Source: Macrostomum lignano
Lineage: Eukaryota
Assembly (NCBI GenBank): GCA_002269645.1
Contig: NIVC01002320.1
Coordinates: 120,354 to 184,353, forward strand
Direction of reading: 5' to 3'
Length of the DNA stretch: 64,000 bases
Position numbers and translations under genes: made by a program. This document shows positions 5,449 through 50,084 of the stretch, in pieces. The notes beneath the pieces were generated by a model. The model was given only the letters and a program-made list of their open reading frames with translations, was not told the DNA's origin and did not search any database. Numbering within the stretch: position 1 is the first letter of the stretch; the number at the start of each line of letters is the position of its first letter.

Positions 5449-7526
5449 CGACGTTTGCCTGCGGGACGTTTGCCAGCCGACATTTGCCAGCCGACGTTTA
5501 CCAGCCGACGTTTGCCTGCGGGACGTTTGCCAGCCGACATTTTCCAGCCGACGTTTACCAGCCGATGTTTGCCTGCCGGACGTTTGCCAGCCGACTTTTT
5601 ATTTTTATTAGTATTAGAGGCAGGGGGGTTGTGTGCACCCTGGCGCACTTTAAGCGACATAGGCACACAACCGGCGAAAGGCATTGCTGCCCATTCCGCC
5701 GACTCCCCTGAGCAGGCATACAAGCGCGCGGATACGTACGCAGGCACACACTCACACAGGAGTGTACAGCGGCCCTAACTTTATATTATCGTTAGACATG
5801 TACACTTCACTGCGCCTTGGGGGGTTGGCTCTCAAGGCCGCTAATTGCACGAGCAGAGCCAAGCCGGGATTCCAATTCAGCCCAAAATTAATGTGACTGC
5901 ACTTGGAATCGAGCCTGGGTTGCTGGCACACCAGAGCCTGCGCTACCGCTGGGCTACGGCCCCCCGCCAGCCGACGTTTGCCTGCGAGACGTTTGCCAGC
6001 CGACGTTTGCGAGCCGACGTTTGCCAGCCGACGTTTGCCAGCCGACGTTTGCCAGCCGACGTTTACAAGCCGAAGTTTGCCAGCCGACGTTTGCCTGCTG
6101 GAAGTTTGCCAGCAAAAATTTGCTAGCCGATATAAAGCCAGTCAGTGAAAAATTTGATACTGAAATATTCGCAGTTTAGCGGTTTGACAAAAACCGTTTT
6201 TACTCAAACTTTTTGACAGTTATTTGCATGTAATACAAGTTCGAAAGCAAAATCTATATAACTATGCAATTCATTAGTCTAACATCTAATATCTAGTTTA
6301 ACAACGATTTTCTTTGAATGTGAAAATATAGTTTACTTAATTTTTGACAATTGTGTATCGTTTTTTCCAGTTTGAGATGTTTGATTTTTTATGTGCGAAA
6401 GAAGACGCGCAGATTACAACGGGAATCTCCAGCGATTAAGTTATGAGGCAAACAAAAAGAGCTGCTGAGCGGTAATTCTGGCTCATATATTTCTCAGTTC
6501 ATTGGGAGATCCGAAAGTAAGCAAATTGATTCCAATGCTGTTGTATTACTACACAAGTAAGACAGGAAACCGCGATCTCAACGTACATGTGTAGACGAGT
6601 CGAATGCGGTACGTTTGTATAGCCAGACAAGCCGCCAGTAACAAGAACTAGTAGGATAGCAAGCGCTAGACACTTCGTATACAAAGCTTAGTCACGCCAA
6701 GGACTACTAAAGTAGAAGGACGCGCAGCACTCGAAATCTATGGAAAATGTTTTGAAGGCCATAGGGAGATAGGAAGTTTTCATCTTTTCAGCACAACAAT
6801 TGTTATTGCTTTCATACGAGGCAAACCCATTGTTCATCTTTTGATATGTTGTGCCAAAATCGTTGTTAAACTAGATATTAGACGTTAGACTAATGAATTG
6901 CATAGTTATATAGATTTTGCTTTCGAACTTGTATACATGCAAATAACCGTCAAAAATTTTGAGTAAAAACGGTTTTTGTCAAACCGCTAAACTGCGAATA
7001 TTTCAGTATCAAATTTTTCACTGACTGGCTTTATATTGGCTAGCAAATTTTAGCTGGCAAACTTCCAGCAGGCAAACGTCGGCTGACAAACTTCGGCTGG
7101 CAAACGTCCCGCAGGCAAACGTCCGGCAGGCAAACGTCGGCTGGCAAACTTCGGCTGGCAAACGTCCCGCAGGCAAACGTCCGGCAGGCAAACGTCGGCT
7201 GGCAAACTTCGGCTGGCAAACGTCCCGCAGGCAAACGTCCGGCAGGCAAACTTCGGCTGGCAAACGTCGGCTGGCAAATGTCGGCTGGCAAACGTCCCGC
7301 AGGCAAACGTCCGGCAGGCAAACTTCAGCTGGCAAACGTCCCGCAGGCAAACGTCGGCTGGCAAACGTCGGCTGGCAAACGTCGGCTGGCAAACGTCGGC
7401 TGGCAAACGTCGGCTGGCAAACGTCGGCTGGCAAACGTCGGCTGGCAAACGTCGGCTGGCAAACGTCGGCTGGCAAACGTCCCGCAGGCAAACGTCGGCT
7501 GGCAAACGTCCCGCAGGCAAACGTCG
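5449..7526. mobile_element. Foldback-type non-autonomous DNA element with long modular inverted arms
   Basis: Left arm 5449-6311 is the reverse complement of right arm 6856-7526. Each arm has an outer array of 14-bp gccgacgtttgcca units and an inner ~215-bp AT-rich unique segment. Spacer is 544 bp; cta flanks both ends (5446-5448, 7527-7529); no transposase ORF seen. Confidence 0.85.
5596..5965 (-). mobile_element. tRNA-derived SINE (family 1), full-length, inserted in the foldback left arm
   Basis: Minus strand begins gggggccgtagcccagcggtagcgc (A-box) ... ggctcgattcc (B-box) and ends in an A-rich tail. Flanked by gccagccgac direct repeats (5586-5595, 5966-5975). Homologous pieces at 22381 and 61803. 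Confidence 0.8.
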
Positions 7527-7948: not shown

Positions 7949-10900
7949 TCAGCTGCTGACACCGCCTGCGGACGAGGCGGCGGAACCGGATGTAGAGGCG
8001 GAACCGGATGTAGAGGCGGAACTGGATGTAGAGGCGGAACCGGACGAGGCTGCGGAACCAGATGAAGCGACGGAACCGGATGAAGCAGCGGAACCGGAGT
8101 TAGAGGCGGAACCGGATGTAGAGGCGGAACCAGATGAAGCGGCAGAACCGGATGTAGAGACGGAGGCAGACGACGCGGCAGACGCGGTGCTGAGAAAGCC
8201 GAGCCGTTTAAGTGAGATTTCAACGTAAGCCGCGCGGTCAGCCCGGCTCCAGTCCACCATTCGGTCGGGCTGCGTGGCCAGCAGGACCGACCAGCCTCTC
8301 CTGGCGTCGGCCACAGCCGGGCACCGGTTATCAAGGTTGAAGTACAGAACACCGGAAGCGTTGCTGGACTCGCACGGAAGGGCGTCGCCGATGGCGTAGG
8401 CAAACGGAGATTCGGCGGCGAACACGCGAGCGTCCGCGAGAAGCTGACGGCTCCAGCTGGACTGGACAACGCTGTCGCGATCAAAGCTGCCGTTGTAGAC
8501 CAGCTGCCAGGCCTGGCCGGAGGCGGTGGTCAGCCGCACCCTGACTAGCGGGAAAGCCAGCGGCCGGGAGCGGAGCAGCTGCGACTTGTAGAACAGGCCG
8601 GGCCGGAGGGCGCCTACGGGGGCGGCGCTGGCCGGGTAGGTCAGCATGCTGTTGCTAAGCAACTCGGCCAGCGTCACCGGCATGTCAGCGGAGGCGATGA
8701 GACCGGGCAGCCAGCCGTCGGAGTCGGTGGGCAGGGACTTGGCCAGCAGTTGCAGCGAGTCCAGGTCCTCCATCTCGGCTAGGGCGGAGGGCCGGCCGGA
8801 GCGGGCGAACCGGAAGCGCGGATACGGGCCCGGCAGGTCCTCGCAGCCGTCCCGGTCGGTGAGCACCGCCAGGAGGCCTTTGCGGCTGGCGCATCGGGAA
8901 CCAGTGGCCGCGGTAGCAGTGGAAGTCGAGGCCGAGGCTGCAGTCGATGACGAGGCGGCCGAGCGAGTCAGGATGGAGAACAGGAGGCTGGGGAAACGGT
9001 CACTGCGAAGGCTCCAGCTGAGTTCCAGCGTCTCCTTCACGGACTCGAGTCGCCAGGGGAAGCTGGCCACCAAGTTGGCGGAGCTGAAGAAGCTGGCAAA
9101 GTCGGCGGCGGCGGTCTGGAAGGTGAGGTAGGCGCGGGTTTCGCCTTCCGAGTTGCGGAAGAGCAGCTTCACCTGGCTGTAGGTGCCGACTGTGAAGTTC
9201 CTCAGCGCGACAAACTGCCGCATCTCGGCAGACTCGGCCAAAGACATCCAGGAGTACGCGGTGCCGCGCAGCAGCGAGTCAAAGACCTCCTGAACGCGGA
9301 CGCCGGAGCCAGCGCTGATCGTCAGCAGTGGCGAGAAATTTTCCAAGTTGGCGAGCTCCTGGCAGCTGGCGAGGGCTTTCTGGGTGCTGACGAAGCTGCG
9401 ATGAGGTGCGCCAGGGGGTTGAGAGGAGTTGAACGCAATGATCTTAACTAGACTGCCTATGCGGGACCTGACACCTCACAGCTTTTAAGCAGCTTAAACA
9501 GCCAGTTCAGGCCTACGAGTACACAGCCAATCCAGGCCAACACACAGCCAATCCAGGCCAACACACAGCCAATCCAGGCCAACACACAGCCAATCCAGGC
9601 CAACACACAGCCAATCAAGGCCAACACACAGCCAATCCAGGCCAACACACAGCCAATCCAGGCCAACACACAGCCAATCCAGGCCAACACACAGCCAATC
9701 CAGGCCAACACACAGCCAATCCAGGCCAACACACAGCCAATCCAGGCCAACACACAGCCAATCCAGGCCAACACACAGCCAATCCAGGCCAACACACAGC
9801 CAATCCAGGCCAACACACAGCCAATCCAGGCCAACACACAGCCAATCCAGGCCAACACACAGCCAATCCAGGCCAACACACAGCCAATCCAGGCCAACAC
9901 ACAGCCAATCCAGGCCAACACACAGCCAATCCAGGCCAACACACAGCCAATCCAGGCCAACACACAGCCAATCCAGGCCAACACACAGCCAATCCAGGCC
10001 AACACACAGCCAATCCAGGCCAACACACAGCCAATCCAGGTCAACACACAGCCAATCCAGGCCAACACACAGCCAATCCAGGCCAGCACACAGCCAATCC
10101 AGGCCAACACACAGCCAATCCAGGCCAACACACAGCCAATCCAGGCCAACACACAGCCAATCCAGGCCAACACACAGCCAATCCAGGCCAACACACAGCC
10201 AATCCAGGCCAACACACAGCCAATCCAGGCCAACACACAGCCAATCCAGGCCAACACACAGCCAATCCAGGCCAACACACAGCCAATCCAGGCCAACACA
10301 CAGCCAATCCAGGCCAACACACAGCCAATCCAGGCCAACACACAGCCAATCCAGGCCAACACACAGCCAATCCAGGCCAACACACAGCCAATCCAGGCCA
10401 ACACACAGCCAATCCAGGCCAACACACAGCCAATCCAGGCCAACACACAGCCAATCCAGGCCAACACACAGCCAATCCAGGCCAACACACAGCCAATCCA
10501 GGTCAACACACAGCCAATCCAGGCCAACACACAGCCAATCCAGGCCAGCACACAGCCAATCCAGGCCAACACACAGCCAATCCAGGCCAACACACAGCCA
10601 ATCCAGGCCAACACACAGCCAATCCAGGCCAACACACAGCCAATCCAGGCCAACACACAGCCAATCCAGGCCAACACACAGCCAATCCAGGCCAACACAC
10701 AGCCAATCCAGGCCAGCACACAGCCAATCCAGGCCAACACACAGCCAATCCAGGCCAACACACAGCCAATCCAGGCCAACACACAGCCAATCCAGGCCAA
10801 CACACAGCTAATCCAGGCACAAGAGCTGGAAACCAGTCCGAACGCACCTGGCCACCTCAGAGCTGTTGGTGCCAGCCTTCATGGACTCAATCTGGGTCTT

Positions 10901-13900
10901 CAACGAGGAAATTCTCGCTGCCATGTCGCTGTTGAGCAGCAGCACATCCTGGATGCGGGCTTCCTTCTCCTGCACCATCGCCTCGGAGTTGCTGGCGGCC
11001 ATGCGCTTCAGCAGCAGCTCCTGGGTGAGCGTCTGCAGCGACTGCCAGGCCGCGGAAATCTGCGCCTCTAGCGTGGCAATCTTGGAGTCCTCGGCGACCA
11101 CCTTCGCCTCCTGGTCGCGTCGCAGGGCTTCCAAACGGTCCTCGGCCGAGCCAATTTGCACCAGAGTCTCCCGGAGCAGCGACACCAGCTGGCTCTTCTT
11201 CACTGTGAGGCTCTGCACCCGCTGCTCGAGCTGGCGCACCTGGACCAGGCTGGTCTCGTAGTCCTCCGCGCTGAACGCCTGGCTGCGCATGGAGTGCAGT
11301 CTGTCCAGCTGGTCCTGCAGCCGCTGCACCGTGGCCTTGTAGTGCGACACCATGCGGCTGCACAGCTCCAGCCTGGAGTTCACCGGCAAACATCCGGGTG
11401 GGATTTCAACTGAGTGGGATTTCACTGAGTGGGATTTCACTGTTCAGGATCTAGTTTTAGTACCGGGTTGTACTGTCTCCCCAAACTAAAATGTTTTTGC
11501 AAAGCCAAACAAGAGGCCACAGGCAAGTAAAGTTCTTGGATGAGAGAGCTAGTACTTCATTCCGCATCATTGAGCAGGTTCCGAAATTTCTGCACTTTAC
11601 GAGAGGACTGAAAATATGGAAAATTCCTGATTGTAAAGTTTTGGCTCTCGAAGGAAAGCATTGAAAATCTTGACATAATGGGTTTAGTAGTAGATAAGCC
11701 TTGGTTTCGAGTCAAATTCAAATTAGTTGTTAGGTCAGCCAAGGTCATCAACAAGTCAGTAGGTCAACTGGGGTCATCAACAAGTCAGTAGGTCAACTGG
11801 AGTCATCAACAAGTCAGTAGATCAACTGAGGGTCATCAACAAGTCAGTAGGTCAACTGGGGGTCATCAACAAGTCAGTAGGTCAACTGGGGTCATCAACA
11901 AGTCAGTAGGTCAACTGGGGTCATCAACAAGTCAGTAGGTCAACTGGGGTCATCAACAAGTCAGTAGGTCAACTGGGGTCATCAACAAGTCAGTAGATCA
12001 ACTGGGGTCATCAACAAGTCAGTAGATCAACTGAGGGTCATCAACAAGTCAGTAGGTCAACTGGGGTCATCAACAAGTCAGTAGGTCAACTGAGGGTCAT
12101 CAACAAGTCAGTATAGGTCAACTGGGGTCATCAACAAGTCAGTAGGTCAACTGAGGGTCATCAACAAGTCAGTAGGTCAACTGAGGGTCATCAACAATTC
12201 AGTAGGTCAACTGGGGGTCATCGACATGTCATTAGGTCAACTATGGGTCATCAACAAGTCAGTAGGTCAACTGGGGTCATCAACAAGTCAGTAGGTCAAC
12301 TGAGGGTCATCAACAAGTCAGTATAGGTCAACTGGGGTCATCAACAAGTCAGTAGGTCAACTGGGGTCATCAACAAGTCAGTAGGTCAGCCTCACCGAAT
12401 CTGCTTGCTCTCGAACTGGTACTGCAGAGTCTCCAGGCTCTGCTGCAGCTGGCTGATGCTGGCGTACACGCTGTAAAGCCAGGCCTCGTACTGGTGCACC
12501 GAGTCCTGCAGGTAGCGCAGAAAGCCCTGCCGGACAGCCAGGCTACTCCTGGCCGAGTTGCACTCCCGGTAGCACTGCGGGAACAGCAGCTGGACGCCTC
12601 TGGTGGACAGCAGATAGTAGGAGCTCAGCTCAGCCAGGTTGCCTGGCGTGGAGACAAAGCCGACGGCCTCGGAGTGCAGCGCCGGGTTCCACGTGGAGCT
12701 GAGACTCAAGAAGTAGGCGTTGGTGCCGGTGGGCAGCAGCGAGGCCGCCTCCTTCAGGCTCCGACCGCTGTTTGTGACGCTGTCGGTGATGACCACAACG
12801 TTGCGGCGGGCATCAGGGCGGCTGACCTGATGCAGCATAGAGGCAGCAGCCGCCACCGCCTCGCCTGTGGCCGTGGCCGAGTCCTCGTCGTAGCGCAGCA
12901 GCAGCAGCCGGCGGAAGAAAACGTCCACAGTCGGACACTCGTCCGGGTTGATGACGCTGAGGACGCGGCCGCTGTAGAAGACGGCGCCGAACTGGACAGC
13001 TGCGGGCCCGTAGCTAAGCTGGCTGGCCAGGCGGGCCATGAAGGAGGCAACCTGGGAGACGGTACGATTAGGCGTTGTTCAGTGAGGGTTCGGTGAGGGA
13101 CGGCGAGGGATTGGCGAGAAATGGCATGAGGGTTCGGCGAGAAATGGCAAGAGGGTTCGGCGAGAAATGGCAAGAGGGCTCGGCGAGAAATGGCAAGAGG
13201 GTTCGGCGAGAAATGGCAAGAGGGTTCGGCGAGAAATGACACGAGGGTTCGGCGAGAAATGGCAAGAGGGCTCGGCGAGAAATGGCAAGAGAGTTCGGCG
13301 AGAAATGGCAAGAGGGCTCGGCGAGAAATGGCAAGAGGGTTCAGCGAGAAATGACACGAGGGTTCGGCGAGAAATAGCAAGAGGGTTCGGTGAGAACTGG
13401 CACGAGGGTTCGGCAGGAGTCGGCGAGTGTGGGGGTCGAATCTCGCGCAGATAGACGGAGACCGGTTTCTGGCTTGTTTGCCTTCGTCAGTTAGCAATAG
13501 ACATACACCGTCCCCTCCCACCAGTATCAGTTTATACAGACATTTCTTATATGGCGGCATCTTGCAGGTTATACAAGAAATTCTACGATTCAAATCTTTA
13601 TAATTTATCTACTTTTCTTAGTAGTCTATATTGAATCTCTCACGGCGGGGGTTTGGCACGAGTCAACAAGGGTTAGACAAGAGTCGGTGAGGGTTAGGCG
13701 AGAGTCAGTAGAGATTCGGCGAGAGTCGATAGAGATTCGGCGAGAGTCGATAGAGATTCGGCGAGAGTCGGTAGAGATTCGGTGAGAGTCGGTAGAGATT
13801 CGGTGAGAGTCGGTAGAGATTCGGTGAGAGTCGGTAGAGATTCGGCGAGAGTCGGTAGAGATTCGGCGAGAGTCGGTAGAGATTCGGCGAGAGTCGGTAG

Positions 13901-16900
13901 AGATTCGGTGAGAGTCAGTAGAGATTCGGTGAGAGTCGGTAGAGATTCGGCGAGAGTCGGTAGAGATTCGGTGAGAGTCAGTAGAGATTAGGCGAGAGTC
14001 AGTAGAGATTAGGCGAGAGTCAGTAGAGATTCTTCGAGAGCCGGTGAGGATTAGGGAATATCGGTAGGGAAATCAAAGCATCAGGTTCACCTGAAATCTG
14101 ATCTGAAAAGGCGACTTGGCTCGGTTGGTGTCCACAACAAAGACAATGTAGTTCTGGCCGGGAAAGCAGGCGGCAGCGGTGCCGGTCCAGTTCTGCTGCC
14201 GGCAGGCGTACTGGCAGCCCTCCGTCAGCTGCGGCAGCTCGCCGCGACGGCAGGTGGCCACCGGGGCTGGGCAGAGGCGGTAGCGACGGAGGCGGCAGCC
14301 ACCATCCAGTTGGAGCCACTCGGAGCTGAACTCGACAGGAGACTGGCGCCACGGCTGCACAGGACAGCCCTTTGCGTCCAGCGGAATGCGAGTGGATGAG
14401 CTGGTGGAGCCTGAAGACGGGGTCGAACCAGAAACAGATCCGACAGTTGAAGCAGAGCCGGCAGTTGAAGCAGATCCAGCAGTTGAAGCAGATCCAGCAG
14501 TTGAAGCAGAGCCGGCAGTTGAAGCAGATCCAGCAGTTGAAGCCGAGCCGGCAGTTGAAGCAGATCCAGCAGTTGAAGCAGATCCAGTAGTTGAAGCAGA
14601 TCCAGCAGTTGAAGCAGATCCAGCAGTTGAAGCCGAGCCGGCAGTTGAAGCAGATCCAGCAGTTGAAGCAGATCCAGCAGTTGAAGCAGATCCAGCAGTT
14701 GTAGCAGAGCCGGCAGTTGAAGCAGAGCCGGCAGTTGAAGCAGAGCCGGCAGTTGAAGCAGATCCAGCAGTTGAAGCAGATCCAGCAGTTGAAGCAGAGC
14801 CGGCAGTTGAAGCAGAGCCGGCAGTTGAAGCAGATCCAGCAGTTGAAGCAGATCCATCAGTTGTAGCAGAGCCGGCAGTTGAAGCAGAGCCGGCAGTTGA
14901 AGCAGAGCCGGCAGTTGAAGCAGATCCAGCAGTTGAAGCAGAGCCGGCAGATGAGGCAGAGCCAGCAGTTGAAGCAGATCCATCAGTTGTAGCAGAGCCG
15001 GCAGTTGAAGCAGAGCCGGCAGTTGAAGCAGATCCAGCAGTTGAAGCAGATCCAGCAGTTGAAGCAGAGCCGGCAGATGAAGCAGAGCCAGCAGTTGAAG
15101 CAGAGCCGGCAGATGAGGCAGAGCCAGCAGTTGAAGCAGATCCATCAGTTGTAGCAGAGCCGGCAGTTGAAGCAGAGCCGGCAGATGAAGCAGATCCATC
15201 AGTTGTAGCAGAGCCGGCAGTTGAAGCAGAGCCGGCAGATGAAGCAGAGCCGGCAGATGAAGCAGAGCCGGCAGATGAAGCAGAGCCGGCAGTTGAGCCA
15301 GAACCAGTAAGACGGCCAGAACCAGCAGTTGAGCCAGAACCAGTAAGACGGCCAGAACCAGCAGTTGAGCCAGAACCAGTAAGACGGCCAGAGCCAGCAG
15401 TTGAGCCAGAACCAGTAAGACGGCCAGAACCAGCAGTTGAGCCGGAACCAGCAGGCAAGGAGCTGGCAGCAGTAGTAGCAGAGGTTTTAGTGGACGAAAA
15501 CGAGCTTGAAGACGCCGATGCAGCGGAAGAAGCCGATGAGGAGGATGTGGAAATGTGGTGGCTCGATTCCATGGCCAGTGCAATCTGTTTGCAGTCAAAT
15601 TGCTGGCACTGGAGCCACTTGGTTGGCCGGGGCGTCTCGCGGTAGCCGGCCGGACAGGCTGGACGCTCGGCCGGACAGTCGACGCAGGTGAGGCTGGGGC
15701 AGCCGTGAGCGTCAATCACCTGAGTTTAAGTGGGTTGGATGGTGGAGAGCTTTAGGCTTGGCGGGGGGCTTTTAATAGCGAAGAATTGCTGATTCCAGAT
15801 TTCCGAGGGAGACACAGGTAGACAGGGAACAGAGAGACACAGGTAGACAGGGAACAGAGAGACACAGGTAGACAGGGAACAGAGACACACAGGTAGACAG
15901 GGAACAGAGAGACACAGGTAGACAGGGAACAGAGACACACAGGTAGACAGGGAACAGAGAGAGACACAGGTAGACAGGGAACAGAGAGACACAGGTAGAC
16001 AGGGAACAGAGAGACACAGGTAGACAGGGAACAGAGAGACACAGGTAGACAGGGAACAGAGAGACACAGGTAGACAGGGAACAGAGAGACACAGGTAGAC
16101 AGGGAACAGAGACACACAGGTAGACAGGGAACAGAGAGAGACACAGGTAGACAGGGAACAGAGAGACACAGGTAGACAGGGAACAGAGAGACACAGGTAG
16201 ACAGGGAACAGAGAGACACAGGTAGACAGGGAACAGAGAGAGACACAGGTAGACAGGGAACAGAGAGACACAGGTAGACAGGGAACAGAGAGAGACACAG
16301 GTAGACAGGGAACAGAGAGACACAGGTAGACAGGGAACAGAGACACACAGGTAGACAGGGAACAGAGAGACACAGGTAGACAGGGAACAGAGAGAGACAC
16401 AGGTAGACAGGGAACAGAGAGACACAGGTAGACAGGGAACAGAGAGACACAGGTAGACAGGGAACAGAGAGACACAGGTAGACAGGGAACAGAGAGAGAC
16501 ACACAGGTAGACAGGGAACAGAGACACACAGGTAGACAGGGAACAGAGAGAGACACAGGTAGACAGGGAACACAGAGAGACACATGTAGACAGGGAACAG
16601 AGAGACACAGCAGAGCGGCTCACCTGTTGCACCTGCTGTGAGCCGGCGGTGCAATTCGGCAGGGCGGTCCCGGAGGCAACGCAGGCGGCCGGCAGATCGC
16701 GACAGCCGGGCGGGCGGCTGCCAGCAGACGGGCAGGGCAGGCAGAACTGAGCGGAGCAGCCGTCAATGCGGAGGCTGGCCAGGTGGAACAGGCCAGGCTG
16801 ACAGTCTGCGGCCTCGAAGTCCAGCTGGCCGCGGCGGCTGCAGCCGGGCCTGGCGCCGCAGGCCTCCTGGTCGCGGCAGGGCCGGCAGGTTGCCGTCTTG

Positions 16901-18555
16901 CAGCCGTTGGCGTCCAGGCTGAACTCGGCGGTGGTGCCGGGGCTGCACAGCACCAGCGGCTCCGGGCAGGGGCGGCGGCACTCGGCGGGCAGCTGAGCCT
17001 CCGACGAATTCAGTCGGGCTGCTGAGCGAGGATTTGCATTCTATTGGCTTTTTGTGCGATAACAGTTGCCAATTCACCCTAGAAAGTGCACCTGGCTCTT
17101 GCGCCACGACCCTTGGGAATGTGAATCAGTCCCTGTGAATCAGTCCCTGTGAATCAGTCCCTGTGAATCAGTCCCTGTGAATCAGTCCCTGTGAATCAGT
17201 CCCTGTGAATCAGTCCCTGTGAATCAGTCCCTGTGAATCAGTCCCTGTGAATCAGTCCCTGTGAATCAGTCCCTGTGAATCAGTCCCTGTGAATCAGTCC
17301 CTGTGAATCAGTCCCTGTGAATCAGTCCCTGTGAATCAGTCCCTGTGAATCAGTCCCTGTGAATCAGTCCCTGTGAATCAGTCCCTGTGAATCAGTCCCT
17401 GTGAATCAGTCCCTGTGAATCAGTCCCTGTGAATCAGTCCCTGTGAATCAGTCCCAGCGAACGCACCCGCCATCTCGCAGCTGGCGCACTCCACCTGAAG
17501 GCAGCCCCCTTCAGCAGCGGGCGCAGCTCGGCGGTACTGCCCGGCGGAGCAGGCCACCGCCCAGTCCGGCTGGCTGCCGCAGTCTTCACTCGGTCGGCAG
17601 GCCGGCAGGTCGCGGTGTTTGAAGTCGCAGTCGCGGCAGCTCCACGGCTGGCAGTGTCCGATCGGATTGTCCGCCCTAAACTGGCCGGCCGGACAGGACA
17701 CCGGCAGGGTGTTGTTCGGACAGGGCTCGCAGATCCAGTGGCAGGTGGCGAGGCCACTGCTGGAGTCCCGCAGCAGCTGCTTGGCGGGCTGGCGGCCAGG
17801 CGGGCAGTCGGGCTTGTTTGCCTCTGTGCAGCCCGGCGCTGGGCAGCCAGGCCGGTCGGCGGTGTCCGGTGTGCAGTCGGCGCACCCGGCCAGCGGACAG
17901 CCGGTCTCTGGGTCAGATTCGGTTCGGACATACTGGCCGGGAGGGCAGACTGGCTCGGACAGTAGCGGACAGGCGGCACAGGAGGACAGCTGGCAGCCGA
18001 GAGAGTCGTTGAATCGACGGAGGAACTGGCCGGAGCCGCAGGCGGGGGCTTCGCAGCCTGCGGCGGGCAGCGGCAGCCGTAGTGGAGGCCCATGAGAGCC
18101 GGGGCGCAGGGCAGGCAGGCGAGCGACGAACAGCCGGCATCCTCGGCCTCGCCCAAGTACTGGCCAGCCGGACATTGGCCGGTAAAGTCGGCCGGCGAAG
18201 CTATTGGTGGGCAGTCGAGGCCGCGGCATTCGGACCGGTGGCTGGAGGTCAGGCCGCACGGCTGGCAGGCGTCAGCGGGGCATCCGGCCGGGTCGAAGCT
18301 GACCTTGTGAAAGTTGCCGGGCGGGCAGTTGATGGAGCGGATGGTGGGGCAGCGAATCTCCGGGGGCAGAGGCTGGGAGTCGGCGATGATGGGGAAGCTG
18401 GGACTCGGAGGCGGCAGTGTGGTCGGGGCTTGGCCGGCATGAACTGTGGATGCCGGGAGCAGCTGGGCAGCTGCTGGTTGGGCCAGCTGGCACAGGGCCA
18501 GACAGCTAAGCAGAAGGGTGGCAACGGCTGGGAGCCGCCGCAGTCTGTGCAACAT
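7949..18555 (-). CDS. Large secreted modular protein: signal peptide, antistasin-like Cys-rich repeats, Ser/Ala/Gly/Thr repeats, VWA domain, coiled coil, two C-terminal globular repeats (6 exons, ~1938 aa, one frameshift near 18060)
   Basis: Exons 18555-17467, 17021-16624, 15719-14091, 13051-12396, 11372-10848, 9467-7949. All introns are GT-AG with matching phases (1,0,0,2,2). Summed length is 5816 nt, becoming a multiple of 3 after restoring one base at the frameshift. N-terminus MLHRLRRLPAVATLLLSCLALCQLAQPAAA; VWA motifs IVFVVD / QFGAVFYS / TATGEAV / VVVITD. Confidence 0.85.
7970..8185 (-). repeat. Coding 18-bp repeat (GSASTS/GSAASS) at the C-terminus of the secreted protein
   Basis: Unit ggttccgcctctacatcc on the minus strand, in frame within exon 6. 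Confidence 0.85.
9521..10818. repeat. 21-bp minisatellite, ~62 copies, filling intron 5
   Basis: Unit acacagccaatccaggccaac, nearly invariant. Confidence 0.98.
11731..12389. repeat. 29-31-bp minisatellite in intron 4
   Basis: Unit ggggtcatcaacaagtcagtaggtcaact, ~21 copies. Confidence 0.96.
13068..13420. repeat. 23-bp minisatellite in intron 3
   Basis: Unit ggcgagaaatggcaagagggttc. Confidence 0.95.
13690..14035. repeat. 21-bp minisatellite in intron 3
   Basis: Unit ggtagagattcggcgagagtc. Confidence 0.95.
14425..15440 (-). repeat. Coding 18-bp (GSASTA) and 36-bp (GSGSTAGSGRLT) repeats in exon 3
   Basis: Unit ggatctgcttcaactgc(t/c) on the minus strand, in frame with flanking Cys-rich sequence. 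Confidence 0.92.
15808..16612. repeat. ~25-bp minisatellite filling intron 2
   Basis: Unit gagacacaggtagacagggaacaga with variable ag dinucleotide number. Confidence 0.97.
17120..17455. repeat. 14-bp minisatellite, 24 copies, intron 1
   Basis: Unit tgtgaatcagtccc, perfect. Confidence 0.98.
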
Positions 18556-22952: not shown

Positions 22953-25900
22953 TCAGAGAGCCTTAAGCGACACGTAGCTCTGCAGCTGGTTGGGCAGCGG
23001 CAGCTTATTAACCTTGTGCTTCATAGAATCAGTGTGCCCCAGAGCCCGTTGGATCTCGTTGCGGCACAGCCGTTTCAAAGAGCGCACGTTGCACTCCTCC
23101 CTGTGCAGCCAGTCGGAGAAGTCCTGATCAGCGTAGATGATCTTGTCCGGTATGATCTGGTTCTCCAACAGCCAGCGGGTGAAGGCCTGCAGGTTAAGCG
23201 GGTCGCAGCCGTGCGACAGCAGCAGCTTGACCATGGGGATGTCCAGCTTGGGGAACTTCACGGCCATGTGCAACGGCGCCAAGCCGTCCTTGTCGCAGCG
23301 GTTCACCTGGGCGCCGTGCTTGATGAGCTTGTCGGCGATGGCCAGGTGGCCGTGCAGCACGGCGATGTACAGAGGAGTTTTGCCGTTGCGGTCGGCGGCG
23401 TTCACGTCGGAGCCGTGGCGCAGCAGCAGGTCGACAATGTCGGTGCGGCCGTGATAGGTGGCCACGTACAGCGGGGTCTTCTTGTGCGTGTCCGGCTGGT
23501 CAACGTCAGCCTCGGAGCGGAGCAGAGCCTGCACAATCTCCAGGTGGCCAAAGTAGGCAGCGATGTACATTGGCGATTTCAGCTCCTTGTTGGGCAGGTG
23601 AACATCGGCGCCCTTGGAGAGGAAATAATTGACAAGCTCGACATGGCCGCGGCTGGTTGCCAGGTACAGCGGCGACCGGCCGTACGAGTCCGTGCTATTG
23701 ATTGACGCGTTGCCCTACAGGTAGGCGGCAGGTAAGTATGCTCAAACTTTCATTAGGATTCCCTTAAAGACGAAGCGGCAATGCGCCTGGCCCAAGGACT
23801 ACTTAAGTAAAGGGAATGGAAACTACGGTTCTTGGAACATTATCAGGCAGGCTTTATCAAAAAAATACTATATGGAGATTGGATTTCATTTGGTCAGCAC
23901 AAAAATTGTCATTGCTTTTGATAGGAAGTAGACCCGATGTTTATTTCGTATGTCCTGCCTTTGTTATAGCTCGATTGATAGTCATAAAGCTTTTCGTTTA
24001 GAAAATTAAGATTATATGTTAGTTTTATTATAACTTTATTAACGGCTGACTTTGACATAGGTAACCCGTTGAAAACGCTAGAGAGTGATAGCAAACAACC
24101 CACTAGTCACTCGAACGACTCTTAATGTGGCTTTTTAACGACTCAAAAACGACTGTAATGCGACGGAGAGGTGACTGTTGAGTCACAAACGCATCACGCG
24201 AGAATCGTAAGAGTCGCGGAAAAAGTCATCCAAGAGTCTTTGTGTTAGCGCGTAACTTTCGAAATGACTCTATACATTTCGCAGACAATAAAACGCCCCA
24301 AATTGATTTTTTGGCGACTTGTTCTGGGACATCTTGGTCGTTTTGGAGTCGTCTAGAGTCATTTCTTTGCTACGTCGTATTCTACATGCGTTAACTCTGA
24401 AACGATTCTGGGGCGACGCAAGCGACTCTGGGACGCTTCTTCACCGTCTTCATCGGGTAATGGTTAGCACTGGCCATCTATAGATTGCGAATAGGGAGTG
24501 TCTATAAATAAACAAATCAATTCCTTGGCTGACACAGAGGGAGTCAAATTTTACCGCTAGGTAGCTAATAGCTACAAAGCCAGGCTCCACTGGATCGATG
24601 CAGTCAAACTGGCGCACCTCATAAGGCTGGAAAATCAATGTAATCCAATCTATAATACTTCTCTCTCACCTGTCCTAATAGGAGCTGAGTCATTGACAGG
24701 CAGCCAGTGTAGGCAGCGTGGTGCAGAGCAGTCATGCCCTGCTTGTCAGTCTTGCTGGCTGAGCTGCCGGCGGCCAGAAGCAGGGCTGCCAGGCCCACTC
24801 CGCTGGCGCCCAGCTCGGCGGCAATCATGAGCGGCGTCATGCCGATCTGGTCGGTGTCCTCCAGCCGCAACGACTCCGACTTCAGCAGGGCGCCAACTAC
24901 CGCCTCGCGTCGGTCCTTCACCGCTGAGGTGAGCGCCGTGTCGCCGCTCTCGCTTTTCAGGTTGACATTGACGCTGGGGAACTGAACCATCTCGGCGGCG
25001 ATCTGGGCGCTGGCCCGGTGCAGCGGGGCCAGGCCGTCGGTGTCCAGCAGGTTGGGATTGCAGTCGTTTTGCAGCAGGGCTCGGCAGGTGGCGCGGTACT
25101 TCTCAGAGGTCTGCGTGGCTATGAGGTGCAGCCCCGTTTGCAAGTGCTGGTTGCGCATGTTCACGTCCGCGTTGGACTTCACCTGGACGGATGGGGGTTG
25201 GGTGCTCAATAATCCTGTTGGTGGGGACTAAAGATCTGGGAGGGTGGGGACTCGATCTGGGATCTGAGAGGGGGTGGAGACAATCTAGGGATCTGGGAGG
25301 GACTCGATCTAGGGATCTAGGAGGGTGGGGATTCGATGTAGGGATCTAAGAGGGTTGGATACTTAATCTAGGGATCTGGGAGGGTTGGGGACTCAATCTA
25401 GGGATCTGGGAAGGTGGGGATTCGATGTAGGGACCTAAGAGGGTAGGAGACTAATATAAAGATCTGGGAGGGTTGGGGACTCAATCTAGGGATTTGGGAG
25501 GGTTGTAGACTCAATCTAGGGATTTGGGAGGGTTGGGGACTCAATCTAAGGATCCGGGAGGTTTGGAGACTTAATCTAGGGATCTGGGAGGGTGAGGATT
25601 CAATGTAGGGACCTAAGAGGGTAGAAGACTAATATAAAGATCTGGGAGGGTTGGGGACTCATTCTAAGGATTTGGGAGGGTTGTAGACTCAATCTAGGGA
25701 TCTGGGACGGTGGGGACTCAATTTAAGGATCTGGGAGGGTTGGGGACTCAATCTAGGGATCTTGGAAGGTGGGGATTCGATGTAGGGACCTAAGAGGGTA
25801 GGAGACTAATATAAAGATCTGGGAGGGTTGGGGACTCAATCTAGGGATTTGGGAGGGTTGTAGACTCAATCTAGGGATCTGGGAGGGTGGGGATTCAATG

Positions 25901-28192
25901 TAGGGACCTAAGAGGGTAGGATACTTAATATAAAGATCTGGGAGGGTTGGGGACTCAATCTAGGGATTTGGGAGGGTTGGGGACTCAATCTAAGGATCTG
26001 GGAGGTTTGGGGACTCAATCTAGGGATCTGGGAAGGTGGGGATTCGATGTAGGGATCTAGGAGGGTTGGAGACTTAATCCAGGGATCTGGGAGGGTGAGG
26101 ATTCAATGTAGGGACCTAAGAGGGTAGGAGACTAATATAAAGATCTGGGAGGGTTGGGGACTCAATCTAGGGATTTGGGAGGGTTGTAGACTCAATCTAG
26201 GGATCTGGGAGGGTTGGGGACTCAATCTAAGGATCCGGGAGGTTTGGAGACTTAATCTAGGGATCTGGGAGGGTGAGGATTCAATGTAGGGACCTAAGAG
26301 GGTAGGAGACTAATATAAAGATCTGGGAGGGTTGGGGACTCATTCTAAGGATTTGGGAGGGTTGTAGACTCAATCTAGGGATCTGGGACAGTGGGGACTC
26401 ATTCCAAGGATCTGGGAGGGTTGAGGACTCAATCTAGGGATCTGGGAGGGTGGGGATTCGATGTAGGGACCTAAGAGGGTAGGAGACTAATATAAAGATC
26501 TGGGAGGGTTGGGGACTCAATCTAGGGATTTGGGAGGGTTGGGGACTCAATCTAGGGATCTGGGACAGTGGGGACTCATTCCAAGGATCTGGGAGGGTTG
26601 AGGACTCAATCTAGGGATCTGGGAGGGTTGGGGACTCAATCTAGGGATCTGGGAAGGTGGGGATTCGATGTAGGGATCTAGGAGGGTTGGAGACTTAATC
26701 CAGAGATCTGGGAGGGTGGGGATTCAATCTAAGGATCCGGGAGGTTTGGAGACTTAATCTAGGGATCTGGGACGGTGGGGACTCAATCCAAGGATCTGGG
26801 AGGGTTGAGGACTCAATCTAGGGATCCGGGAGGGTTGAGGACTCAATCTAGGGATCTGGGAGGGTTGGGGACTCAATCTAGGGATCTGGGAGGGTTGGGG
26901 ACTCAATCTAGGGATCCGGGAGGGTTGAGGACTCAATCTAGGGATCTGGGAGGGTTGAGGACTCAATCTAGGGATCCGGGAGGGTTGAGGACTCAATCTA
27001 GGGATTTGGGAGGGTTGAGGACTCAATCTAGGGATCCGGGAGGGTTGGGGACTCAATCTAGGGATCTGGGAGGGTTGAGGACTCAATCTAGGGATCCTGG
27101 AGGGTTGGGGACTCAATCTAGGGATCTGGGAGGGTTGAGGACTCAATCTAGGGATTTGGGAGGGTTGAGGACTCAATCTAGGGATCTGGGAGGGTTGAGG
27201 ACTCAATCTAGGGATCTGGGACGGTGGGGACTCAATCTAAGGATCTGGGAGGGCTGGGGACTCAATCTAGGGATCTGGGAGGGTTGAGGACTCAATCTAG
27301 GGATTTGGGAGGGTTGAGGACTCAATCTAGGGATCCGGGAGGGTTGGGGACTCAATCTAGGGATCCGGGAGGGTTGGGGACTCAATCTAGGGATCTGGGA
27401 GGGTTGAGGACTCAATCTAGGGATCTGGGACGGTGGGGACTCAATCTAAGGATCTGGGAGGGCTGGGGACTCAATCTAGGGATCTGGGAGGGTTGAGGAC
27501 TCAATCTAGGGATCTGGGAGGGTTGAGGACTCAATCTAGGGATCCGGGAGGGTTGAGGACTCAATCTAGGGATCCGGGAGGGTTGAGGACTCAATCTAGG
27601 GATCTGGGAGGGTTGAGGACTCAATCTAGGGATCCGGGAGGGTTGAGGACTCAATCTAGGGATCCGGGAGGGTTGAGGACTCAATCTAGGGATCCGGGAG
27701 GGTTGAGGACTCAATCTAGGGATCCGGGAGGGTTGAGGACTCAATCTAGGGATCCGGGAGGGTTGAGGATTCGATGTAGGGAGGGTAGAAAAATTGAGAG
27801 CCTGGAAGGTTAACCAGAGAAGAAGTGCAGTATCGAACATGCTTCTGTGGCTGGCATAGTTAATCTAACAAACAACTGACCAGCAGTTCGATAATTTCAG
27901 TCCGTCCATAAGTTGCAGCCTGCAGCAGCGGGTAGGTTGGCGCATCGTACACGTGTATGTTGGCGCCAGCCTTCAACAACAGCTTGACCATCTGCACGTG
28001 GCCGAGTTCGACGGCCAAATTAAGGGGACAGACGCCGTCAATAACCATGCTGGGATCCACATCGTTGGGATAAGAGAACAGATAAGTCAGGGTTTCAACA
28101 TTGTTAGAGCGGATGGCGCCGCGCAGCAACCAGGGTATTTGCTGCTTGGAGATCTGCGGCTTGTGGCGGTGCTTAGAGTAGCGCTGGCCCAT
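22953..28192 (-). CDS. Ankyrin repeat and SOCS box (ASB-like) protein, 3 coding exons, ~528 aa
   Basis: Exons 28192-27881, 25182-24670, 23714-22953 (phase 0,0; 1587 nt). Many TPLHxA/GHxxIVxxLL ankyrin motifs; C-terminal SOCS box VRSLKRLCRNEIQRALG...LPLPNQLQSYV. Confidence 0.92.
24064..24458. mobile_element. MITE-like element (~395 bp) in ASB intron 2
   Basis: Imperfect terminal inverted repeats acccgttgaaaacg / cgtcttcatcgggt; interior rich in gactc/gagtc motifs arranged roughly symmetrically. Confidence 0.55.
25225..27780. repeat. 30-bp G-rich minisatellite filling ASB intron 1
   Basis: Unit gggatctgggagggttg(a/g)ggactcaatcta; degenerate at low coordinates, homogeneous at high coordinates. 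Confidence 0.97.
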
Positions 28193-29732
28193 CTGCCTGG
28201 CAACAGCCGCATGTGCTGCAGAATGCAATTTCGAGTAGCAGACATTCGCAACAAGTTTTTGGCTTTTATAAGCAGATTAAATCATATATATATTGGATTC
28301 ATATATATTTTAAAGATATTTATAGGTAGGAAATACCTGACCCACTACAAAACGCCAGCTGTGTGAACTAGAGTTCAGCTTAATTGGCTATTTTATCACT
28401 GCAACTACCTTGAAAAGTAACACTAAGACTATTTTAACTGCATACTAACCATGACCAATCATTTTTAACTCAGCATTGGTAATGAACACTCTAATGCAAT
28501 AGGCTATCAACCTCATTACATGGAATATTCTTAACAAAATATTTACCCATATAAAATGCTAAACAAGGACCACTAGTATAACAGGATAGAAAACTCAAAG
28601 ATTGTTTAATTTTTGGAGGCCAATTTTCTAGAAAAAAATATTTTTTATCACAAAATCAATAATTGAATTTGAGATAAGACAGTGAAGATTATCATTCTTT
28701 TAATTTAGCATTGGATAACATGCTATTCTATTGTAGTTTAGAGTTGTGCATTTGAGTTGTATTTTAAAGATATTAATTTTTAAGCTAAACATAAGCCTAG
28801 ATTTTATCACAAATATAATTGATTCAAGAAGAAACAAAACAAGTTTAGCCTATGCCACCTATAAGTATTAATATAACTATTAAACAAGCATTCTAAGCCT
28901 GTTTTATGTTTAACATAAAAAGTATATTTTAAAATTTGTAACTTATTATAGAAGAAACAAGATAATATATAGCTAATAAAAAGAAATATCATATTGAAAA
29001 TGTTATAATTATATTATCCAAAGTAATTATCAAAAAGAAGCCATATTTGAATTTGGATATCATTATTTTCTAATAATTTAAAACATTTTAAATGATTAGT
29101 CACATAATCATATTATCTCAAACTATGCAATACAAGTCTAGCCATATAGTAGGTTTTAGTATAATAGATGTTTTTACTAGTAAAGATAGGGGCCTTAGCT
29201 TTAATTGATCATAATACATTAAAATCCTGTAAAAATTTCAAATTTCTAAAAAAGAATCTAGCATTTATTTGTATCATTAATAAAATTATTATAAAATAAG
29301 AATATTATAAAAATAAAAATAATTTATGGTATAAATATGTAGAAGGGCCTATGTTTATTCCTAGAAAATTAGTTTCCGCGAAATTAAATTCCCGCCAAAA
29401 TAACAAGTACCGTATGATTTGTTTTAATTTGTAAATTTGTTTTACTGAATAATATTTTGTTTTAATGATGCGAATAATTTGTTTTAGCTATTCATTTGTT
29501 TTAATGTTAGATATGTAAGCCAATGGAACAAGACTCTAACTAGTATAAATACAAGGCCAAAATAAAACGAAACCTCGACCTTTTTCGGGTTCCTAACTCA
29601 GTTAACAGGAAATTAAGATTTCTTGGTTCTTCTGAATTAGTCCTTTGAAGCAGTATTGCAGACTAAGTTACCGTGTTGGATAGCAAAGAGCGTTTTGCCA
29701 GTATAATGATAAGCAGGGATTGCCAGTAAAGA

Positions 29733-48730: not shown

Positions 48731-49309
48731 CTGAGCAGAGTCTGGGCACCAAATACTATGTCCATCTTAAGAGAGGCCGGGAAAGTGCAGACGGAATTGG
48801 CAGCCGTCACGGATAAAGCAGTGACGCGCGCATGGTTTCAAGCTGAATCAAAATATTAATTTGTCTAATGACCGGGGCAGACTGAGGATTGGCAAAGGAA
48901 GAGTGCGCCGCAGAGTCCTGAGGCACTAGCAGCTCAGCATCATCAGCGCAGTGCTGTGGGATGGCTGGCGGCCTAGTCTAGCGAGAAATCCGTGAAATTA
49001 GCCGTCATCCAACGGACAGGCTGAGAGAAAGGAAAATAATTAATCTGAGTTTCTAAAGAACCTGGCTCAGAAAGTGCTGGTATACGAGAGCGGAGTTTAT
49101 CTAGCTAAAAAGAGTCCAACCGACCAGGAACTGCTAGAATACTCTAGCAGTAGGGGAGCACGGGAGCACGGGAAGCGCAAAGTTTATGAGGCTGATCATT
49201 TGGAGCGCATGACTACCTGGTCATGGTCAGGCAGTTTACACACTGTAATATGGTCTTGAGTGTGTACACGGAATTAAACCTAAAATCAATGATTCGAGTG
49301 AAAATCTTT

Positions 49310-50084
<775 letters not shown>

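What the first reader, a model, noticed from the sequence alone, without database searches (positions are those of the whole stretch)
7949..18555. Uncharacterised ~1940-aa secreted protein with a new-looking domain architecture
Seen: signal peptide; >=11 modules of C-x2-G-x(6-12)-G-C-x4-C-x2-C (antistasin-like spacing, one split by intron 2); ~330 aa of GSASTA repeats; a VWA fold with a degenerate MIDAS (DTNRA instead of DxSxS); a ~200-aa coiled coil; two globular repeats; a Ser-rich tail. I do not recognise this combination as a named family. Inference: an oligomeric, heavily O-glycosylated mucus, adhesive, glycocalyx or seminal-fluid protein. Flatworm adhesion and mucus proteins are large, Cys-rich and repetitive, but no orthology is claimed.
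Basis: partly seen in the sequence, partly recalled or inferred. Interest (0 to 1): 0.7.

Follow-up and report, generated by a model that had tools for sequence, protein, structure and literature searches.

The report
Orphan secreted VWA glycoprotein gene, flatworm
This is a real-looking six-exon gene of the flatworm Macrostomum lignano for a secreted protein of about 1,930 residues, in which only the von Willebrand A domain matches anything known; its function is untested and public databases hold only a truncated automatic prediction of it.

Summary
The finding largely holds. On the minus strand, ATG 18555 to stop 7949, six exons joined by five GT-AG introns with consistent phases give a 1,933-residue protein. 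It has a signal peptide and no other hydrophobic segment. It has 9 strict, 1 variant and 1 partial Cys module (0.19 expected by chance). A 337-residue (GSASTA)n array follows, then a VWA domain (Pfam E 2e-12) with DTNRA in place of DxSxS, a proline-free heptad region of about 200 residues, a 420-residue orphan C-terminus and a Ser-rich tail.

Three corrections:
- Exon 1 carries a 1-nt frameshift (18105-18040) that no credible intron removes.
- The two C-terminal halves are not detectable repeats.
- The GSASTA array could be an intron, and the public model splices it out. I favour coding, because the tail array encodes the same hexapeptide with only synonymous third-position differences.

The organism is Macrostomum lignano. 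The only relative among billions of proteins is UniProt A0A1I8JL82, an 840-residue mis-spliced model of this locus, plus a small bacterial protein that shares the Cys module. No Pfam, PDB or fold match exists for the modules or the C-terminus.

Best reading: a lineage-restricted, oligomeric extracellular scaffold or mucus-type glycoprotein. Which secretion it belongs to cannot be decided here. Interest is modest.

The parts
17467..18555 (-). Exon 1: start codon, signal peptide (aa 1-31), Cys modules 1-7. It contains a 1-nt frameshift.
   Evidence: ORFs in two frames. Donor CGG|GTGCGT. Modules listed.
18040..18105 (-). Interval in which the reading frame must shift by one base (frame 1 to frame 0). 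Probably an assembly indel in a C-run, or a real lesion.
   Evidence: CDS length is 5801 = 2 mod 3. Module-bearing frames change here. Every GT/GC..AG pair that restores the frame lies inside coding-like sequence.
17022..17466 (-). Intron 1 (445 nt, phase 1), mostly a 14-bp minisatellite x24
16624..17021 (-). Exon 2: Cys modules 8-9 and the first half of module 10
15720..16623 (-). Intron 2 (904 nt, phase 0), a 25-bp minisatellite x31. It splits module 10.
   Evidence: Splicing rebuilds CTAGSQQVQQ|VIDAHGCPSLTCVDC. Array.
14091..15719 (-). Exon 3: end of module 10, partial module 11, S/A/T-rich flank, GSASTA array, 7-Cys pre-VWA region, start of VWA (VVDTNRA)
   Evidence: Single 550-codon ORF. 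Model.
14442..15452 (-). 18-nt x 56 array encoding (A/T/D)GS(A/G)S(T/S), 337 aa. Translation is probable but unproven.
   Evidence: No indels. Variation by codon position is 25/21/70. GC3 is 0.20. The consensus differs from the tail array at five third positions and one first position.
14401..15618 (-). Alternative in-frame intron (AA|GTGGCT ... CCACCAG|C, 1218 nt) used by the public model. It would remove the array.
   Evidence: P0001 reads ...YRETPRPTNSSTRIPLDAKGC. Nucleotides.
13052..14090 (-). Intron 3 (1039 nt, phase 0), 21-bp and 23-bp minisatellites. It lies inside the VWA domain just after the MIDAS position.
12396..13051 (-). Exon 4: rest of the VWA domain (to about 12584) and the start of the coiled coil
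   Evidence: Pfam VWA E 2.1e-12. Weak hits to collagen VII, collagen VI and integrin I-domains.
11373..12395 (-). Intron 4 (1023 nt, phase 2), a 29-bp minisatellite x22
10848..11372 (-). Exon 5: coiled-coil region (aa 1258-1432)
   Evidence: Heptad score and absence of Pro. Only weak coiled-coil Pfam hits.
9453..10847 (-). Intron 5 (1395 nt, phase 2), a 21-bp minisatellite x62, bounded by stop codons in the exon frame
7949..9452 (-). Exon 6: orphan C-terminal region (two segments joined by an S/A/T linker), a Ser-rich tail (18-nt array 7979-8164) and the TGA stop
   Evidence: 508-codon ORF. No homologue. AF2 pLDDT 36.

Best explanation
This is a protein-coding gene of Macrostomum lignano for a secreted, lineage-restricted, multidomain extracellular glycoprotein of about 196 kDa before glycosylation.

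Shown:
- The exon-intron structure.
- A cleavable-type signal peptide with no membrane anchor.
- About ten tandem disulfide-rich modules, whose core is predicted as a beta-hairpin.
- A VWA fold that lacks two of the three DxSxS metal-binding positions.
- A proline-free heptad region of about 200 residues.

Inferred mechanism:
- The Cys modules form a stiff N-terminal rod.
- The S/T-rich array, if translated, forms an extended O-glycosylated spacer.
- The MIDAS-less VWA acts as a metal-independent protein-binding module, as in collagen VI and VII VWA domains.
- The coiled coil assembles the chains into dimers or trimers.
- The product would be a multivalent scaffold of a secreted matrix, such as mucus or rhabdite secretion, glycocalyx, egg-shell or cement material, or a reproductive secretion.

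Which secretion it belongs to cannot be decided from sequence.
For: - Gene model: five GTG..CAG introns with consistent phases, and a Cys module rebuilt across intron 2. Intron number (5) and sizes (0.4-1.4 kb) fit the published M. lignano averages (PMC5730564).
- Signal peptide present and no second hydrophobic segment.
- Modules: 9 strict copies against 0.19 expected. AF2 on a module with 10 paralogous rows gives pLDDT 71-77 over the core and a hairpin E29-35/E41-47.
- VWA: Pfam E 2.1e-12, above the gathering score. The nearest solved structures are collagen VII vWFA2, collagen VI alpha3 and integrin alpha1/alpha2 I domains.
- Heptad signal only in aa 1201-1400, with no Pro.
- S+T is 51-57% in the array, the linker and the tail.
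- The tail array, which must be coding because it runs into the stop codon, encodes the same hexapeptide as the mid array. Five of the six differences are synonymous third-position changes.
- Organism and the existing partial model.
Against: - No transcript, expression or proteomic evidence could be brought to bear.
- Exon 1 is out of frame by one base, so this copy may not make the full protein.
- The GSASTA array has GC3 0.20 against 0.65-0.82 in the rest of the gene. It resembles the minisatellites that fill every intron, and the public model splices it out.
- The C-terminal 420 residues have no homologue and no confident structure, so their role is unknown.
- Oligomerisation and glycosylation are inferred from composition only.
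Confidence: 0.55

Rival explanations
1. The GSASTA array is a sixth intron, one more minisatellite-filled intron. The protein is then about 1,530 residues with no mucin-like central domain, although it keeps the short S/A/T linker and the Ser-rich tail.
For: - All five certain introns are dominated by minisatellites.
- An in-frame GTG donor and CAG acceptor flank the array, and the UniProt model uses them.
- GC3 is 0.20 against 0.65-0.82 in the rest of the gene.
- Splicing would put CPAGYRETPRPT next to ...LDAKGC. This is a module-like unit interrupted at the same relative position as module 10 is by intron 2.
- Two other frames of such arrays also stay open, so the open frame is weak evidence.
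Against: - The period is a multiple of 3 and there are no indels over 56 units.
- Variation is concentrated at third codon positions, 70 of 116, with 57 synonymous and 38 non-synonymous changes.
- The necessarily coding tail array encodes the same GSAST(A/S) unit, differing at five synonymous third positions.
- The 56 non-repetitive codons after the putative donor stay in frame, complete a C-x4-C pair of module 11 and are S/A/T-rich like the other linkers.
- Automatic models are built on repeat-masked DNA and tend to turn such arrays into introns.
Confidence: 0.3
2. This copy is a pseudogene or decaying duplicate. The frameshift in exon 1 is real, and only a truncated or aberrant product is made from this locus, while a functional paralogue may lie elsewhere in the partly duplicated DV1 genome.
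For: - The CDS is 2 mod 3, with the frame switch at 18105-18040.
- No natural-looking intron repairs it.
- The public model also reads on in the wrong frame at the same place.
- The sequenced line carries 180 Mb of >=95% identical duplicated blocks (PMC5730564).
Against: - Everything downstream of the shift is intact over about 5.3 kb of coding sequence. There are no stops, the splice sites are preserved, the modules are intact and GC3 is strong.
- Both public assemblies derive from the same noisy PacBio data, so the shared shift is not independent evidence.
- The shift lies in a run of C-rich sequence where single-base assembly errors are common.
- An in-frame GT..AG pair (18303..18026) could also bypass it while rebuilding a perfect module.
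Confidence: 0.15
3. The Cys modules are antistasin- or follistatin-type inhibitor domains, and the protein is a multivalent secreted protease inhibitor or growth-factor binder rather than a structural component.
For: - The motif C-x2-G-x(n)-D-x-x-G-C resembles the antistasin core (recalled from memory).
- The top fold-search rows, though not significant, are follistatin domains (E 1.6-5).
Against: - Neither Antistasin nor any other Pfam family matches the region or the single modules, even at E<=10.
- The profile finds nothing credible in PDB sequences.
- All fold matches have E>1 and probability <0.3.
- The terminal spacing C-x4-C-x2-C differs from antistasin.
- The rest of the architecture (VWA, coiled coil, S/T arrays) is that of matrix proteins.
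Confidence: 0.05

Closest known systems
UniProt A0A1I8JL82 (Macrostomum lignano 'VWFA domain-containing protein', 840 aa, automatic prediction)
   Same: It is the same locus or a near-identical duplicate. The N-terminus is identical, as are modules 8-10 and most of the pre-VWA region and VWA domain.
   Different: - It reads about 90 residues in the wrong frame after the exon-1 shift.
- It splices out the GSASTA array and 15 residues of the VWA domain.
- It stops at the end of exon 4, so it lacks most of the coiled coil, the whole C-terminal region and the tail.
- It carries no functional annotation beyond VWA.
Matrilins (cartilage matrix protein family) and other non-collagenous VWA matrix proteins
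   Same: They are secreted and combine VWA domains with small disulfide-rich modules and an alpha-helical coiled coil that oligomerises the chain. The inferred way of working is the same: a multivalent matrix adaptor.
   Different: - Matrilin modules are EGF domains, which Pfam does not detect here.
- The matrilin coiled coil is short and C-terminal. Here it is about 200 residues and is followed by 420 orphan residues.
- Matrilins have no S/T-rich arrays.
- There is no sequence relationship beyond the generic VWA fold.
Collagen VII vWFA2, collagen VI N-terminal VWA domains and integrin alpha1/alpha2 I domains
   Same: These are the nearest solved VWA sequences (E 0.03-0.5). Collagen VII vWFA2 and several collagen VI VWAs also lack a complete DxSxS motif.
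   Different: The similarity is marginal, there is no collagen triple-helix region, and integrin I domains have an intact MIDAS.
Flatworm and echinoderm adhesive proteins (Mlig-ap1, Mlig-ap2, sea-star Sfp1) and gel-forming mucins
   Same: They are large, secreted, Cys-rich, repetitive and glycosylated (PMC6410801).
   Different: - Those proteins use VWD-C8-TIL, EGF, lectin, TSP1 and LDLa domains together with K/R-rich or long 221-255-residue repeats. None of these was detected here.
- The sizes are 5,407 and 14,794 residues against about 1,930.
- The domain here is VWA, not VWD.
Antistasin-like domain (Pfam PF02822)
   Same: Small size and a shared C-x2-G...D-x-x-G-C core.
   Different: There is no profile match. 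The loops are longer and the ending is C-x4-C-x2-C.
P0002, a 142-residue hypothetical lipoprotein-like protein from a bacterial metagenome contig
   Same: It has three tandem copies of C-x7-C-x2-G-x10-G-C-x4-C-x3-C, almost the spacing of module 1. The phmmer E-value is 9.6e-6. The Smith-Waterman score is 151 against a maximum of 79 in 500 shuffles.
   Different: The context is bacterial, next to an ABC transporter and a response regulator. It has no VWA domain or other shared parts. Common descent and convergence of a simple disulfide hairpin cannot be told apart.

Membership tests
von Willebrand factor type A domain (Pfam PF00092) | Profile match above the curated gathering score over most of the domain | tested here: met
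   E 2.1e-12, 48.1 bits against a cut-off of 23.8, profile positions 2-141 of 174.
von Willebrand factor type A domain (Pfam PF00092) | Complete MIDAS (DxSxS ... T ... D) for metal-dependent ligand binding. This defines the integrin-type subclass, not the fold. | tested here: not met
   The motif reads D-T-N-R-A. A downstream T (SATATGEA) and D (VVVITDS) are present by eye, but I did not confirm them with a structural alignment.
Antistasin-like domain (PF02822) | Profile match, and the 6-Cys spacing ending G-C-x2-3-C-x-C (spacing recalled from memory) | tested here: not met
   No Pfam hit for the region at E<=1 or for single modules at E<=10. The observed ending is G-C-x4-C-x2-C.
EGF, Ephrin-receptor-like, furin-like and TIL cysteine-rich repeats | Profile match to any of these Pfam families, or a significant structural match | tested here: not met
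   No Pfam family matched. The PDB profile search gave a best E of 0.8. Foldseek gave a best E of 1.6.
Matrilin family | VWA domain(s), then EGF repeats, then a short C-terminal coiled coil | tested here: not met
   VWA is present. No EGF was found. The coiled coil is long and not C-terminal. The resemblance is functional only.
Gel-forming mucins and Mlig-ap-type adhesives | VWD-C8-TIL assemblies and/or a C-terminal cystine knot | tested here: not met
   None of these Pfam families was detected in any exon.
Mucin-like (PTS) domain | A long tandem array rich in Ser/Thr (and usually Pro) that is O-glycosylated | tested here: inconclusive
   The array is 395 residues with 51% S+T but only 2 Pro. 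Translation is unproven. Glycosylation cannot be tested with these tools.
Alpha-helical coiled coil | Sustained heptad periodicity without helix breakers | tested here: met
   A home-made heptad score gives 0.49-0.66 for aa 1201-1400 and <=0.36 elsewhere. No Pro in aa 1205-1432. This is a crude method and the oligomer state is unknown.

The most novel reading that the evidence does not exclude
The roughly 45-residue module, (C-x4-5-C-x7-12-)C-x2-G-x9-13-(D-x-x-G)-C-x4-C-x2-C, is a so far undescribed disulfide-rich domain family present in both a flatworm matrix protein and bacterial lipoproteins. Together with a C-terminal region of new fold, it builds a Macrostomum-specific oligomeric secretion component, for example of rhabdite mucus or a reproductive secretion.
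Probability: 0.2. Interest if true: 0.45.

Novelty: new variant of a known kind. Interest (0 to 1): 0.3.

Why it matters
- If expressed as modelled, the gene adds a candidate structural component to the poorly known secretions of a flatworm used as a model for bioadhesion, regeneration and sexual selection.
- It points to a small cysteine module that current domain libraries do not cover.
- It shows how automatic annotation of the repeat-rich M. lignano genome truncates and mis-splices large repetitive secreted proteins. The public model has 840 residues against about 1,930 here.
- It does not open a long-standing question. Lineage-restricted secreted proteins with one recognisable domain are common in flatworm genomes.

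Tried and rejected
1. Intron to repair the exon-1 frameshift. I listed all GT/GC..AG pairs of length 3n+2. All lie in coding-like, module-bearing sequence, so none is convincing. Only 18303..18026 rebuilds a clean module, and I keep it as a remote possibility.
2. Homologues of the VWA-to-C-terminus region, the C-terminus alone and a module profile (one search failed on a length limit). Only the self-model P0001 came back.
3. Exhaustive phmmer of the Cys-rich region plus the C-terminus. Only P0001 and the bacterial P0002 came back.
4. Pfam on all exon products and on single modules. Only VWA matched.
5. PDB sequence searches with the Cys region and with the module profile. The hits were spurious: designed armadillo proteins, MPEG1 and a SprB-like repeat protein.
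6. AF2 of the C-terminal 421 residues without an alignment. pLDDT was 36, which is unusable, so I ran no fold search on it.
7. AF2 of one module with paralogous rows, then Foldseek against the PDB. Nothing significant.
8. Self-comparison of the two C-terminal halves. No similarity.
9. Paralogues inside the window by tblastn. None.
10. Exact look-up of P0001's encoding contig. Not on record.
11. Literature. No paper cites the UniProt accession. The seminal-fluid screen mentions no VWA candidate. Mlig-ap1 and Mlig-ap2 are different proteins.
12. Rfam and tRNA scans of the window. Nothing.
13. No canonical AATAAA lies within 400 nt downstream of the stop.


Full report
**What is at the coordinates**

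The region 7949-18555 is G+C-rich (55-63%) compared with its flanks. On the minus strand it carries a chain of long open segments. Reading the junctions gives six exons: 18555-17467, 17021-16624, 15719-14091, 13051-12396, 11372-10848 and 9452-7949.

The five introns are 445, 904, 1039, 1023 and 1395 nt. All start with GTG and end with CAG, and their phases (1, 0, 0, 2, 2) keep the frame. Intron 2 gives independent support for the splicing: joining its flanks rebuilds a complete cysteine module, CTAGSQQVQQ|VIDAHGCPSLTCVDC.

Five introns averaging about 1 kb match what is published for Macrostomum lignano: 4.9-5.0 introns per gene and a mean intron length of 1.1-1.4 kb (PMC5730564). The finding's end points are exactly the ATG and the stop codon.

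The joined CDS is 5801 nt, which is 2 mod 3. Within exon 1 the module-bearing frame changes between about 18105 and 18040.

I listed every GT/GC..AG pair that would restore the frame. All lie inside coding-like sequence. The only elegant one, 18303..18026, would delete two modules while rebuilding one.

The simplest reading is a missing base in a C-rich run. The public assemblies of this species were built from noisy PacBio reads. A real lesion in one copy of a partly duplicated genome is the alternative.

**Check of each claimed part**

- *Signal peptide.* The sequence is MLHRLRR, then an 18-residue hydrophobic core, then AAA|Q. It is the only segment of membrane-like hydrophobicity, so the product should be secreted.
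- *Cys modules.* Nine copies match C-x2-G-x5-14-C-x3-5-C-x2-C, against 0.19 expected and at most 3 in 2000 shuffles. There is also one long-loop variant and one truncated copy. Seven units carry an extra N-terminal C-x3-6-C pair.
- *GSASTA array.* It consists of 56 units of 18 nt (337 residues) with no indels.
- *VWA.* Pfam PF00092 matches at E 2.1e-12, above the gathering score. The nearest solved relatives are collagen VII vWFA2, collagen VI alpha3 and integrin alpha1/alpha2 I domains, all weak.
- *Coiled coil.* A simple heptad score stands out only for aa 1201-1400, and aa 1205-1432 contain no proline.
- *C-terminus.* The two segments, joined by an S/A/T linker, show no similarity to each other. 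'Repeats' is therefore not supported.
- *Tail.* The last 81 residues are 57% S+T and form an 18-nt array that runs into the stop codon.

**Is the GSASTA array translated?**

This is open to real doubt. Every certain intron of the gene is filled by a minisatellite, and such arrays stay open in several frames. The array's GC3 is 0.20 against 0.65-0.82 elsewhere. An in-frame GTG..CAG pair (15618-14401) removes it in the public model.

Several points argue for translation:
- The period is a multiple of three and there are no indels.
- Copy variation is concentrated at third positions (70 of 116; 57 synonymous against 38 non-synonymous changes).
- The 56 non-repeat codons after the putative donor stay in frame and complete a C-x4-C pair.
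- Most telling, the tail array must be coding, and it encodes the same unit: GGT TCC GCC TCT ACA TCC against GGC TCT GCT TCA ACT GCC. That is five synonymous third-position differences and one first-position difference.

I put translation at roughly two in three.

**Organism and relatives**

The VWA-to-C-terminus query found a single protein among 5.8 billion: UniProt A0A1I8JL82 of Macrostomum lignano, 'VWFA domain-containing protein', 840 residues. Its sequence shows it is an automatic model of this locus or a near-identical duplicate. It continues in the wrong frame after the exon-1 shift, skips the array and 15 VWA residues, and ends with exon 4.

Other searches gave the following:
- The C-terminal 421 residues alone found nothing.
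- An exhaustive HMMER search of 1.84 billion representatives with the Cys-rich and C-terminal parts found only that model and a 142-residue bacterial metagenome protein, P0002. P0002 has three copies of a very similar module, with a Smith-Waterman score of 151 against at most 79 in shuffles.
- Module profiles found nothing in Pfam, in PDB sequences or in the large protein collection.
- AF2 on one module with its nine paralogues as the alignment gave a moderately confident beta-hairpin core. That core has no significant structural neighbour; the best Foldseek E was 1.6, to follistatin.
- AF2 on the C-terminus was unusable, with pLDDT 36.

**Interpretation**

The shown features are secretion, a tandem disulfide-rich rod, S/T-rich low-complexity stretches, a MIDAS-less VWA and a long coiled coil. 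These are the parts list of extracellular scaffold proteins. In way of working, the closest analogues are matrilin-type VWA adaptors and mucin-like secretion components. The protein fails the membership tests for matrilins (no EGF), for gel-forming mucins and Mlig-ap adhesives (no VWD/C8/TIL; and PMC6410801) and for antistasin.

I therefore read it as a lineage-restricted oligomeric matrix or mucus glycoprotein.

**Verdict**

The case is an uncharacterised, taxonomically restricted secreted protein with one known domain. It is already partly present in databases as a faulty automatic model. It is useful for re-annotation and as a candidate for flatworm secretion biology, but it is not surprising to a specialist.

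Noticed in passing
window 17120-17455, 15809-16610, 13084-13414, 13680-14045, 11743-12388, 9521-10818: Each of the gene's five introns consists mostly of its own minisatellite. The periods are 14, 25, 23 and 21, 29, and 21 bp, with up to 62 copies at 88-100% identity. Tandem repeats make up about 15% of this genome according to PMC5730564, but one array per intron is striking.
   Followed up: partly
window 18026-18303: An in-frame GT..AG pair (AAG|GTCAGC ... GGCCAG|, 278 nt) would bypass the exon-1 frameshift and join two half-modules into a perfect one, CPPGNFHK|FLRRFNDSLGCQLSSCAAC. It could be coincidence or a rescue splice.
   Followed up: no
L001 2099-2527 (metagenome contig Ga0373632_0061399): A 142-residue bacterial lipoprotein-like protein carries three tandem copies of a Cys module with almost the same spacing as the flatworm modules. 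It sits between an ABC-transporter permease gene and a response-regulator gene.
   Followed up: partly
window 7038-7526: A 14/28/58-bp tandem array lies about 400 nt downstream of the stop codon. No canonical AATAAA occurs within 400 nt of the stop.
   Followed up: no
window 22953-28228 (minus strand): The neighbouring gene encodes ankyrin repeats and a C-terminal SOCS box, so it is ASB-like. Its introns also carry arrays (26754-27840) that stay open as PQPSQIPRLS-type ORFs.
   Followed up: partly
window 32808-35084 and 35223-38090: A large minisatellite block, open as VRFVVSGLWCQ-type ORFs, lies next to a plus-strand gene for a long E/K/Q/R-rich coiled-coil protein with no Pfam match.
   Followed up: no
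window 56791-58671 (plus strand): An uninterrupted 626-codon ORF matches the amiloride-sensitive sodium channel family (DEG/ENaC, PF00858, E 1.9e-48). It is apparently intronless.
   Followed up: no
window 49213-50223 (minus strand): A 336-codon ORF has weak pentapeptide-repeat matches (PF00805, 24 bits against a cut-off of 20). This may be a repeat artefact.
   Followed up: no
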